Source of the DNA: Ylistrum balloti
Lineage: Eukaryota
Direction of reading: 5' to 3'
NCBI RefSeq assembly: GCF_031769215.1
Contig: NW_026782663.1
Span: 62,001-126,000 of the forward strand
DNA length: 64,000 nt
Positions 32,501 through 35,500 of this stretch are shown here, piece by piece. Below the pieces are notes generated by a model. That model saw nothing but the letters and a program-made list of their open reading frames with translations, did no database searches and was not told where the DNA came from. The position numbers were made by a program, and so were the translations under genes. The stretch's first letter is position 1; every line of letters starts with the position of its first letter.

Positions 32501-35500
32501 AATATAACTAGAGACAGTTTCAAGATAATCAACTGCTGTTAAATCTGTAACAATAACAATATTGACAAAAAAATATCATACTTCATCACTATCATCATCC
32601 GATTCTATCATCGCTGATATCACACTATCCTGGTCTGATCTAGAAAAAACAAAAATGACAACATTAATACACAGTTTCCAACCACAGAGAGTGACATGTC
32701 TAGATGTCTTTCAAACCTTAATAATTTTATTGATGATTATAGTATAGTTAGTTATTCAGAAAGTTACTGTCAGTCTACTGAAATATAGAGAGTCTATCAA
32801 ACTGACATAGGGGCCTTGATTTTAACTCAGTCCTTAACCAATTTGACTCCTAATTTAAATAATACGAAGAATATGGTTCTGAGGACGGCATACCTAGTGT
32901 GCCGAAACTAGTCAACTAATAAAGTTACAGAAGATCTTCATTGGCGTTGTCTGGTCCTGCTTACCAATTTTTTTTTTTCCTCTTTTTTTTTTTTTTCCCC
33001 CGTTTTTTTTTTTTTTTCCTAATGTATATGTAAATCTTGTTGTTCAGGTTCCGTTAACATAACATACCAGTGTATTAATGTAAAGATGGCAAAACATCCG
33101 CATAATATTGTCAGCAAACAATAAATATTAATTTTATACAGAAAAAAAATCTACCCATCACTTTACTAGAAACGTGACCATAGATCTATATCCACAGTCC
33201 ATAGTTGTCATCACATGATGATCACCTACAGAAATGCCTTTTATAATGTCAGTAATAAGACCATTAGGACCCATAGAAGAGATTTTATCATAAACATCTA
33301 ACTACACCTATATCCATGTAGTCAGTGGTCAGAGCACCTGCCTATAAAACAGTTAACCACAAACATTTCAATGGATGGTACTGCAGTTTAATAGTCGTAG
33401 GAGTAAGTTTTGGATTAGTCCATCCCCAACCCTGAGACCTAGATATCATTTCTACATAATCTAATGAAATACTGAAAAACCAATAATAAGATCAACAAAA
33501 AGAAATGATAATCAACATTTAAAAACCAATTTTCTGATCTTCAATCGCACATTTTTTCATGCAAAGACAATTGCTATGTTTTAGGTAATTTTCATGCAGT
33601 ATATGGTTTTTCTACCTTAATATTGATATCTTACCTATGTGATATAGTAGAGCCAATATTGCTCTTAGTATAGGTTAATTAAATATTTCTAACATAAATG
33701 TCCATCATCATGAGAGTTGAATAGCTTAGCAATCGTGTCACCTACTTTTTGATAGCTGATCCTGTTTTTGGTACACCATCTGTTTTTGATGGTACCTTCT
33801 TCTTCCCTTTGTCACTTGCTAAGGCTGCGCCACTTTTCTTCATAGCCTGCATATTCTTCTCATATTCTCGTTGTTTTTCCTCTCTTCTCTTCTGTCTCTT
33901 GAGATCTCTCTCTTCTCTTATTTCCTGAAAACAGTCATAGGTCTTGGCTAAAAAAATGCTATTTTTTTAAATACAAAATCTTGGTGAAATAATTCAGATA
34001 CCTAAATCAGATAGCTCTTAGTCACTATCAGTTTTTGGTCTGTGTATATACTCAATTTTTAAAACTGAGTATTTAGATGTAAATAGTGCATACTTTTTAA
34101 TGTTATATTTATTTACATAACACTTGTCTTGATATCTATATTGGAACCTTAAGCCTGGTATAGTCTGACAAATACTTTTTCATTCATACATGTATTTCAA
34201 TTTTGTTATATCACTCTTGGATGATACAATAATAAAGAATTTTTGAAACCAAAGTTTATCAAAGCTCCAGCTTAAACATTCACTTGGTACTAAACTAAAC
34301 CATTAATAAATACAACAACTGACAACTGTAGCCTATCAGTAAGACTATACTACCTGAGGTGTAAGGCTGTCCAGAAACTTCCTGTAAAGTTGATATTCCT
34401 TCAACGTATCTTCATTTTTGGAAATTTCAGATTTTATGGTCATCATCTGTGTGTTAATTTTCTTGACCTCTGCTACTTTTTCCAGTTTTGCTTTTGTTTC
34501 ATTCTCTGCTCTGCACAACAAAATATATAATTTAATTGCTAGATTCAAATTTTCCATAAATCTTATTTGTTAACAATTATTTGATGGCTTGTTTTCTATG
34601 ACAGATAGTCTTCCTTTATTTTATTTTTTCCACAATATTTACTGAAATTAAAATTGAAAAAGAGACTGTTGACATACTTACTCTCTCACTGCTTCTGCCG
34701 AGTTGGCATCATTTTCTTTGAGAAATTCATCAAACATGGCAGCATCTTCTTCTAGGTACTGTTCTGCCAGCTCTAGTTTCTTTTCCTCCTTTTGTGCCAT
34801 CTCTTCAAGCTTCTTCATCTCATCACGCTTTACACCCAGTGAGTACTACAATAAAGAACCAGTTATACAGCTATGTAGACTTAAGCAATTCAGGAAGGCT
34901 TAAATCATATGATTTGCTTTTTTACAGGAATGAGAATCATACGTATGTAAACATCAAAGAATTCAATGTCTAAGTATATTTCTTAAAAATTACAGCAACA
35001 TTTCATATCAATATCAACATAAACAACAGTAAAATGTTTCAGACCATACCTGTACAAGAAACATTTCCCTTTTCTTAGCAATATACTCTGCCAGGGACTC
35101 CTTTTCTACATGGCGATCTAGGAAAAAAAAAAAAAAAAACAAATTAGAAAAAAAATAATCATACTTGTACATTCATGTTTGTTTTACAAATATTAACCAT
35201 CTCTAAGACAATATGTCCATACTTGGTATTTAGCCTATTTATTACTAATGCTGTTACATGGAATTATAAAATAATGCTTTTCATCACATTCTAACATTTT
35301 CTATCATCCATTTCTAAAATCCTTTTAGTCAAATTTGTAATTATACCTCTGGTCACTCTGATTGTGTATTGTGGGTCATCTTTAACGGACACAGTTTTGT
35401 CACCATCTTCACCATCTTTTTCCTCATCTGAGTCAGCTGGTCGGATCATGGAAGCTGTGCGGAAGTTCACTTTTGATGAATACGTTGTTTTCTCATGCAC

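What the first reader, a model, noticed from the sequence alone, without database searches (positions are those of the whole stretch)
32874..32923. Penelope-type minimal hammerhead ribozyme hidden in a CFAP100 intron
Seen: all hammerhead core nucleotides occur in type I order on the plus strand: helix I UGGUU/AACUA, CUGAGGA, one extra C, 7-bp helix II GGCAUAC/GUGUGCC, GAAA, a near-absent helix III with palindromic ACUAGU, and GUC at the cleavage position (predicted cut after 32913), followed by AATAAA. Established: Penelope-like retroelements and related retrozyme-like repeats in animals carry such minimal hammerheads, whose palindromic helix III supports cleavage as dimers. Inference: the terminal-repeat remnant of a Penelope-like or small non-autonomous ribozyme retroelement (roughly 32740-32965). 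It is antisense to CFAP100, so it would not cut that pre-mRNA. I see only one copy here, so a monomer may be poorly active.
Basis: partly seen in the sequence, partly recalled or inferred. Interest (0 to 1): 0.75.

Follow-up and report, generated by a model that had tools for sequence, protein, structure and literature searches.

The report
Penelope retroelement hammerhead relic in intron
The self-cutting RNA motif is really there, but it sits in a 98-base dead-end fragment of an ordinary Penelope-like jumping gene inside a CFAP100 intron, a kind of relic known since 2014 and already met several times in this same scallop genome.

Summary
Window 32876-32916 (+) carries a complete minimal type I hammerhead: GUU/AAC helix I, CUGAGGA, a bulged C, a 7-bp helix II, GAAA, the palindrome ACUAGU, and GUC with the cut after 32913.

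The interpretation also holds, with new borders. The repeat is 32876-32973 (98 bp), not 32740-32965. It is the extreme 3' end of a Penelope-like element. At another locus, two 223-bp repeats holding the same motif flank reverse transcriptase and GIY-YIG ORFs and are bounded by a 9-bp target duplication.

Related families in the genome keep helix II through compensatory changes and keep helix III palindromic (CUAG to CAUG). Rfam's hammerhead models do not detect it.

The window copy lacks the family's promoter-like upstream part and has no second hammerhead within 64 kb. It lies antisense between two CFAP100 exons, so it is most likely inert.

One modest addition: 5' ends in several families cluster exactly at the first ribozyme base. 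They often carry an extra G and lie 31 nt after a TATA box, which suggests the element's transcripts start there.

Earlier notes of this scan found the same kind on other DNA of this genome. No sequencing-run or read evidence could be obtained.

The parts
32876..32973 (+). 98-bp solo fragment: the 3'-terminal part of a Penelope-like element's pseudo-LTR (hammerhead, AAUAAA, GU-rich box, T-run). It is 97-100% identical to other copies.
   Evidence: All genomic matches start at 32876 and end at about 32971-32973. The same end is the 3' end of the full element on C207.
32876..32916 (+). Minimal type I hammerhead ribozyme motif (helix I GUU/AAC through the cleavage site).
   Evidence: 73.4 bits, E 1.8e-17 with my own model; the window copy was in the model's seed. 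Covariation.
32879..32886 (+). Core box CUGAGGA (C3-A9) plus the unpaired C between A9 and 10.1.
   Evidence: The extra base is a stated hallmark of PLE min-HHRs (PMC4209133). It is C, U or rarely G in relatives.
32887..32903 (+). Helix II, 7 bp (GGCAUAC/GUGUGCC) with loop CUA, including the G10.1-C11.1 pair.
   Evidence: 92-95% of cells paired, and 6 of 7 pairs show changes on both sides across families.
32904..32913 (+). GAAA box, palindromic ACUAGU (minimal helix III, able to pair only between two copies), and C17. Predicted cleavage after 32913.
   Evidence: The palindrome is kept as CUAG or CAUG in relatives: UA 14 versus AU 12 in alignment A1.
32918..32923 (+). AAUAAA hexamer just after the cleavage site. 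A(A/U)UAAA recurs at this place in most related families.
   Evidence: Its function as a poly(A) signal is inferred, not shown.
32943..32954 (+). GU-rich box GGCGUUGUCUGG. A GGYGUUG-like box recurs about 25-35 nt after the hexamer in related families.
   Evidence: Function inferred.
32968..32973 (+). T-run at which insertions of this family end. In full elements the run is templated and is followed by internal sequence.
32875..32875 (+). Extra G immediately before the element's first base. It is absent from copies that continue upstream.
   Evidence: G precedes GTT in 9 of 18 copies whose homology stops there, and in 0 of 51 that continue upstream. Background G frequency is 0.18, P about 0.002.
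32974..33022 (+). T/C-rich low-complexity tract after the insertion. It is not part of the repeat family.
   Evidence: Other copies lack it.
34345..34557 (-). CFAP100 exon (DUF4200). This is host-gene context, not part of the element.
   Evidence: PF13863, E 1.9e-14. (8j07 chain j4, residues 217-269, E 2.7e-12).
32108..32347 (-). CFAP100 exon (context).
   Evidence: 8j07 chain j4, residues 379-429, E 4.2e-15.

Best explanation
Window 32876-32973 is a dead-on-arrival retrocopy of the last 98 nt of a canonical Penelope-like retroelement (RT followed by a C-terminal GIY-YIG endonuclease) of this scallop genome. It is inserted antisense in a CFAP100 intron.

In the parent element, each 223-bp pseudo-LTR has two parts. 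The first is a 119-nt promoter-like part with CRE-like ACGT motifs and a TATA box. The second is the 98-nt part seen here: a minimal type I hammerhead, an AAUAAA hexamer, a GU-rich box and a U-run at which insertions end.

The ribozyme has almost no helix III. Its palindromic ACUAGU can pair only with a second copy. Cleavage after GUC is therefore expected only when two copies meet, as in a pLTR-ORF-pLTR transcript, or when the element's protein assists.

The window copy has an intact core but no promoter, no partner within 64 kb and only a 3-bp native helix I. It is most likely an inert, young relic with no effect on CFAP100.

Shown: the motif, the covariation, the family's link to RT/GIY-YIG, the borders and the host-gene context. 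Inferred: cleavage as a dimer, inactivity of this copy, and the role of the upstream part as a promoter.
For: - Motif and chance level.
- Repeat borders and copies.
- Full element with two 223-bp repeats at 98% identity, RVT_1 (E 2.4e-7), GIY-YIG (E 2.7e-7) and target duplication AGTACCATG.
- RT relatives carry PF00078 and, many of them, PF01541; the best is 84% identical, from the scallop Ylistrum balloti.
- Covariation in helix II and a maintained helix III palindrome.
- At least 147 model hits genome-wide in several families.
- Inverted pairs and 5'-truncated copies typical of PLEs.
- TATA at -31 and CRE-like motifs in copies that keep the upstream part.
- No second hammerhead and no PLE RT in the window.
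- CFAP100 exons on the minus strand on both sides.
- Literature: the same architecture, and single min-HHRs uncleaved in vitro (PMC4209133); a protein-assisted PLE hammerhead and internal RT initiation (PMC11167929); pLTR structure with truncated and inverted copies (PMC8557442).
Against: - No Rfam hammerhead model matches, even at E up to 10 on 301 bases. This is expected for a motif without helix III, but it means no curated model confirms it.
- Helix I is only 3 bp in the family core, shorter than the 4-5 bp quoted for PLE min-HHRs.
- The covariation alignments contain related copies, and A2 was fitted to the model, so the shuffle statistics overstate independence.
- The RT, GIY-YIG and upstream ORFs on C207 lie in three separate frames, so that copy is itself probably defective.
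Confidence: 0.9

Rival explanations
1. The 98-nt unit is not a random 5' truncation. It is a short capped transcript that starts at the pseudo-LTR's own start site (the first ribozyme base) and ends at the element's 3' end, and it is copied in trans by the Penelope machinery. That would make it a promoter-less, SINE-like 'R-only' retrocopy.
For: - Four copies of this family with unrelated flanks start at the same base (window, C280, C56, C731) and one more starts 3 nt in (C580).
- In three families, 14 of 76 copies end their upstream homology within 3-6 nt of the core, about 8 times the per-base rate further upstream.
- An extra G precedes 9 of 18 such copies, versus 0 of 51 that continue upstream.
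- TATA lies exactly 31 nt upstream in the parents.
- C280 and C56 copies have target duplications.
Against: - No RNA data.
- The sample is biased: the model search needs an intact core, so truncations inside the ribozyme are under-sampled.
- Several of the junctions abut inverted copies rather than unique DNA.
- Two families show the same hot spot without a clear TATA box.
Confidence: 0.4
2. It belongs to a small tandem 'non-LTR retrozyme' that spreads through circular RNA, not to an autonomous Penelope-like element.
For: Animal retrozymes carry similar type I hammerheads and are proposed derivatives of PLE pLTRs (bioRxiv 10.64898/2026.07.22.740005). Other hammerhead families in this genome do occur about 110 nt apart in direct orientation (C7 706331/706442, C36 1317500/1317607).
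Against: No tandem array of this family was seen. Its only direct pair is 3.67 kb apart and flanks RT/GIY-YIG. The window holds a single copy.
Confidence: 0.05
3. The hairpin plus flanks is the 3' end of a Helitron or another DNA transposon, and the hammerhead likeness is chance.
For: A GC-rich hairpin sits near a sharp repeat border.
Against: - The border lies 5' of the hairpin on the strand that ends in the family's common 3' end.
- Copies are truncated from the hairpin side, have 9-12-bp target duplications, and the family is bounded by RT/GIY-YIG-flanking repeats.
- The core boxes are invariant while helix II covaries.
Confidence: 0.01
4. The host has recruited this copy as a working ribozyme that cuts an antisense or intronic transcript at the CFAP100 locus.
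For: The core is intact and an AAUAAA follows the cut site.
Against: - The copy is 97-100% identical to many others, so it looks intact because it is young.
- It is antisense to the gene, has no promoter of its own and no partner copy.
- Single min-HHRs do not cleave detectably in vitro (PMC4209133).
Confidence: 0.02

Closest known systems
Minimal hammerhead ribozymes (min-HHR) in the pseudo-LTRs of metazoan Penelope-like elements (Cervera & De la Pena 2014, PMC4209133)
   Same: - Type I order of the core boxes.
- An unpaired base between A9 and 10.1, and the G10.1-C11.1 pair.
- A 7-bp helix II, a short helix I and a minimal palindromic helix III.
- Location in both terminal repeats of an RT/GIY-YIG element.
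- Most genomic copies are solo truncated fragments, some in close inverted pairs.
- Several consensus families per genome, with compensatory changes.
   Different: Nothing of kind. The family-conserved helix I is 3 bp here (an internal loop and further pairs are possible only in copies that keep the upstream part). The loop-3 palindrome is CUAG in this family, whereas most sister families in the genome have CAUG.
Poseidon PLE of Anolis carolinensis (PAc), studied in vitro (Frangieh et al. 2024, PMC11167929)
   Same: A hammerhead in the pLTR shortly upstream of the place where insertions end. Insertions end at a defined internal site of the RNA. The ribozyme is not self-sufficient.
   Different: In PAc the ORF starts inside the ribozyme and the RT start lies in an AC-rich stem-loop. 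Here no ORF overlaps the ribozyme and insertions end at a U-run. No biochemical data exist for the scallop family.
Animal non-LTR retrozymes (small tandem hammerhead repeats giving circular RNAs)
   Same: The same ribozyme type, with a palindromic helix III that favours cleavage of multimers. They are proposed to derive from PLE pLTRs.
   Different: Retrozymes are short head-to-tail arrays without coding capacity. This family is dispersed, not tandem, and its full copies encode RT and GIY-YIG.
Rfam hammerhead families (Hammerhead_1, Hammerhead_3, HH9, HH10, Hammerhead_II)
   Same: The same catalytic core.
   Different: No Rfam family scores this sequence at any reported threshold. The curated models expect a real helix III and a shorter helix II.

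Membership tests
Hammerhead ribozyme, type I, PLE min-HHR class | Core boxes CUGANGA ... GAAA ... UH in type I order | tested here: met
   All core columns are invariant in 28 relatives.
Hammerhead ribozyme, type I, PLE min-HHR class | [quoted passage not shown] | tested here: met
   C at 32886. Present in every relative. Listed as a hallmark in PMC4209133.
Hammerhead ribozyme, type I, PLE min-HHR class | G10.1-C11.1 pair and a long (6-8 bp) helix II supported by covariation | tested here: met
   Helix II is 94.9% paired in A1 and 91.7% in A2, and 6 of 7 pairs have changes on both sides. Slid controls are 18-48% paired.
Hammerhead ribozyme, type I, PLE min-HHR class | Short helix I (4-5 bp in the literature) | tested here: inconclusive
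   Only GUU/AAC (3 bp) is conserved (91.9% paired). The two outer pairs in the window come from flank. One sister family can add 7 bp beyond an internal loop (by eye).
Hammerhead ribozyme, type I, PLE min-HHR class | Minimal helix III with palindromic 15.2-16.2 and loop 3 | tested here: met
   ACUAGU is present. The central pair switches UA to AU with the palindrome kept.
Hammerhead ribozyme, type I, PLE min-HHR class | Self-cleavage after H17 | not testable with these tools
The literature reports no cleavage of monomers and weak cleavage of dimers.
Rfam hammerhead families | Score at or above the gathering threshold of a curated model | tested here: not met
   no hammerhead family listed even at E up to 10.
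Penelope-like element (canonical EN+) | Reverse transcriptase followed by a C-terminal GIY-YIG endonuclease | tested here: met
   For the family, not the window copy. C207 ORFs have RVT_1 and GIY-YIG in that order. Homologues have the same architecture. No RT in the window.
Penelope-like element (canonical EN+) | Pseudo-LTRs from partial tandem structure, 5'-truncated and adjacent inverted copies | tested here: met
   223-bp repeats 3.67 kb apart. Inverted pairs on C283, C756, C731, C165, C403 and C237. Truncated copies.
Penelope-like element (canonical EN+) | Assignment to a named clade (Penelope/Poseidon, Neptune, Nematis) by RT phylogeny and linker motifs | not tested
   No tree was built. 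Sources give only 'uncharacterized protein' names.
Non-LTR retrozyme | Short head-to-tail tandem units, each with a hammerhead | tested here: not met
   No tandem copies of this family. A single copy in the window.

The most novel reading that the evidence does not exclude
In these scallop Penelope-like families the pseudo-LTR would work like a retroviral U3-R. A TATA/CRE promoter fires exactly at the first base of the hammerhead. Every pLTR-ORF-pLTR transcript then begins and ends with one ribozyme copy, which supplies the two partners the palindromic helix III needs. Cutting would strip the capped 38-nt leader and release one exact unit of RNA. The 98-nt 'R-only' transcripts would occasionally be retrocopied, as in this window. 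The extra G at many such junctions would be the reverse-transcribed cap.
Probability: 0.35. Interest if true: 0.45.

Novelty: already known. Interest (0 to 1): 0.17.

Why it matters
As a finding it matters little. It is one more solo copy of a ribozyme-bearing transposon end of a class described in 2014, and earlier follow-ups of this scan reached the same verdict on other DNA of this genome. It does not touch CFAP100 expression in any way the sequence can show.

Three practical points follow. Rfam-based annotation misses this whole class. In this genome an intact-looking ribozyme reflects a young insertion, not host selection.

The side observation is a cheap, testable lead on the still unknown role of hammerheads in endonuclease-positive Penelope-like elements. 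In several families 5' ends pile up exactly at the ribozyme's first base. They often carry an extra G and lie 31 nt after a TATA box.

Tried and rejected
- **Rfam.** A gathering scan of the whole window and an E up to 10 scan of 32700-33000 gave no hammerhead hit, only chance snoRNA/sRNA matches.
- **Folding.** A single-strand fold of 32870-32925 gives -14.3 kcal/mol, z -2.2, and pairs the bulged C with G12, which is an inactive alternative. A two-strand cofold gives a domain-swapped duplex and says nothing about the active dimer. Neither was used as evidence.
32740-32965 is rejected because 32740-32875 has no other copy in the genome.
- **Helitron 3' end, chance motif, host-recruited ribozyme.** All rejected; see the rival explanations.
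- **Pol III reading.** TATA at -31, a start on G and an end at a T-run would fit a Pol III small-RNA unit. I considered this and left it open but unlikely, because full elements read through the T-run and an AAUAAA plus GU-rich box is conserved.
- **Intron check.** No minus-strand ORF of 25 aa or more overlaps the insert. A further CFAP100 exon probably lies near 33740-33950, but I did not confirm it.

Full report
**1. The observation**

- GUU at 32876-32878
- CUGAGGA at 32879-32885
- one unpaired C at 32886
- helix II GGCAUAC/GUGUGCC at 32887-32903, with loop CUA
- GAAA at 32904-32907
- the palindrome ACUAGU at 32907-32912
- GUC ending at 32913
- AAC at 32914-32916
- AAUAAA at 32918-32923

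A descriptor that fixes only the core boxes and spacing matches the 64-kb window once, with none in 100 dinucleotide shuffles. In the whole 648-Mb genome it matches 701 times, against 84 for the reversed pattern. About 70 of the 701 hits are a 23-bp minisatellite on contig C53 and are not ribozymes.

Rfam gives no support. No hammerhead family appears at gathering thresholds over the window, or at E up to 10 over 32700-33000.

**2. What the repeat is**

A DNA search of the window's own genome shows that only 32876-32973 is repeated.

Most other copies continue upstream into a conserved stretch with a TATA box 31 nt before the GUU. Several also continue downstream past the T-run.

On contig C207, two copies lie 3.67 kb apart in direct orientation. 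A self-comparison shows they are part of 223-bp repeats that are 98% identical. Between them, on the same strand, lie ORFs with RVT_1 (E 2.4e-7) and then GIY-YIG (E 2.7e-7). The whole 3.9-kb insertion is bounded by the duplication AGTACCATG.

The RT ORF has more than 2,000 relatives. Those listed carry PF00078, and many also carry PF01541. The closest is 84% identical, from the scallop Ylistrum balloti; others come from oysters, clams, mussels, a sea urchin, amphioxus and a newt.

Inverted pairs a few hundred bases apart, abutting inverted 5'-truncated copies, and copies cut short from the 5' side are frequent.

This is the textbook picture of a canonical endonuclease-positive Penelope-like element (PMC8557442). 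The window copy is its last 98 bases. The window has no PLE RT.

**3. Is the ribozyme motif under constraint?**

I aligned 28 copies from several families without gaps and counted pairs:
- Helix II is 94.9% paired, with changes on both sides in 6 of 7 pairs.
- Sliding the partner by 1-3 columns drops pairing over the whole structure to 18-48%.
- The centre of the helix III palindrome switches between UA and AU (14 versus 12), so it stays palindromic.
- In helix I only the inner three pairs hold.

A covariance model built from this alignment scores the window copy at 73.4 bits; the window copy was part of the seed. The model finds no other hit in the window above noise. It finds at least 147 hits in the genome, with only 150 candidates scored.

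Sixty further hits were fetched and aligned to the model. They show distinct helix II sequences, such as GGCUAGC, GGUUGGC, GACACAC and GGCCUGC, each with its matching 3' strand. They give 91.7% pairing in helix II and again 6 of 7 pairs changed on both sides.

Two caveats apply. Copies within a family are related, and A2 was fitted to the model, so the shuffle counts overstate independence. The between-family compensatory changes are plain by eye.

All four features that PMC4209133 lists as unplanned hallmarks of PLE min-HHRs are present:
- consensus families with compensation
- a base between positions 9 and 10.1
- the G10.1-C11.1 pair
- palindromic 15.2-16.2

**4. Anatomy of the parent repeat, and a side finding**

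In copies that keep it, the 119 nt before the ribozyme hold CRE-like motifs at about -119/-117, -101 and -74. The first of these is a full TGACGTCA. A TATA box stands at -31. The following 98 nt are what the window holds.

An A(A/U)UAAA hexamer 3-12 nt after the cut site, and a GGYGUUG-like box some 25-35 nt further on, recur in families whose other flanking sequence differs.

Insertions of this family end at the T-run. In full elements the T-run is templated and followed by internal sequence. This recalls the internal RT start sites shown for an Anolis PLE (PMC11167929).

Four copies of the window's family with unrelated flanks start at the same base, the G of GUU, and one more starts 3 nt in. 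Across three families, 14 of 76 copies lose upstream homology within 3-6 nt of the core. That is about 8 times the per-base rate further upstream.

In the 18 copies whose homology stops within 8 nt of the core, the base just before GUU is G in 9. It is G in 0 of the 51 that continue upstream. Background G is 0.18, giving P about 0.002. The window has this extra G at 32875.

An added G at the 5' junction is the known mark of a cDNA that reached a capped RNA end (from my own knowledge, not tested here). Together with the TATA spacing, this suggests that transcripts start at the first base of the ribozyme. The window copy could then be the retrocopy of a short start-to-end transcript rather than a random truncation.

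This is an inference with a biased sample: truncations inside the core escape the model.

**5. Host context**

Minus-strand ORF pieces at 34345-34557 and 32108-32347 match DUF4200 and CFAP100 chains of solved axoneme structures, at residues 217-269 and 379-429. No minus-strand ORF of 25 aa or more overlaps the insert.

Another note of this scan places the CFAP100 promoter region at 37333-40381, which is consistent with the minus-strand reading.

**6. How it most likely works**

In the parent element, two ribozyme copies come together on one more-than-unit transcript, or with help from the element's protein. They extend helix III through the palindrome and cut after GUC. What the cut is for remains open in the literature. 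In vitro, unprocessed RNA was the main template for the Anolis element.

The window copy has no promoter, no partner and a 3-bp native helix I. Single min-HHRs showed no detectable cleavage in vitro. I therefore read it as inert. Its intact core reflects youth: it is 97-100% identical to other copies.

**7. Novelty**

The kind is known. Earlier follow-ups of this scan reached the same verdict for other pieces of this genome (s1-236912, s1-240621, s1-240642, s1-258778, s1-240641). I score it low.

The only part that might be new is the start-site/extra-G pattern. A text search found no paper stating it, but that is weak evidence of absence.

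Noticed in passing
G000 C7:706331-706474 and C36:1317500-1317641: Two other hammerhead families occur as direct pairs only about 107-111 nt apart. This looks like a short tandem, retrozyme-like arrangement rather than a PLE end.
   Followed up: no
G000 C53:1125014-1127246: A 23-bp-period minisatellite (CTGAAGAAA..GTAACCAAGGA units) satisfies the loose hammerhead descriptor about 70 times. 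It is a false-positive source for pattern-based ribozyme counts.
   Followed up: no
window 32931-32940: A perfect 10-nt palindrome, GAAGATCTTC, lies 17 nt after the cut site. It could pair two RNAs more strongly than the 6-nt helix III palindrome. It is family-specific and roughly a 1-in-10 chance event in 98 nt.
   Followed up: partly
window 32974-33022: A T/C-rich tract directly after the insert is absent from other copies. It is either a T-rich target site or a later expansion. No clear target duplication for the window copy.
   Followed up: partly
window 32960-32967 (minus strand): Read in the CFAP100 sense, the insert's end gives TTGGTAAG, a 5'-splice-site-like GTAAG inside the intron. 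There is no evidence that it is used.
   Followed up: no
loci L085-L144, 3-12 nt and about 30-45 nt after the cut site: A(A/U)UAAA and a GGYGUUG-like GU-rich box recur after the hammerhead in most families. This is a poly(A)-site-like layout, yet insertions extend about 20-30 nt beyond where such a site would cut.
   Followed up: partly
L031 867-2655 (G000 C207:494866-496654): A roughly 1.8-kb tandem array with a 58-bp period lies about 1.8 kb from the full Penelope-like element. It is open in all three + frames (ORFs of 555-595 aa with no Pfam match).
   Followed up: no
L112 152-184 (+) versus 71-119 (-): A second, weaker hammerhead hit in opposite orientation lies about 30 nt from the first. 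This is another head-to-head pair of truncated ends.
   Followed up: no
window 33740-33950 (minus strand): A lysine/glutamate-rich open stretch is probably a further CFAP100 exon between the two confirmed ones.
   Followed up: no
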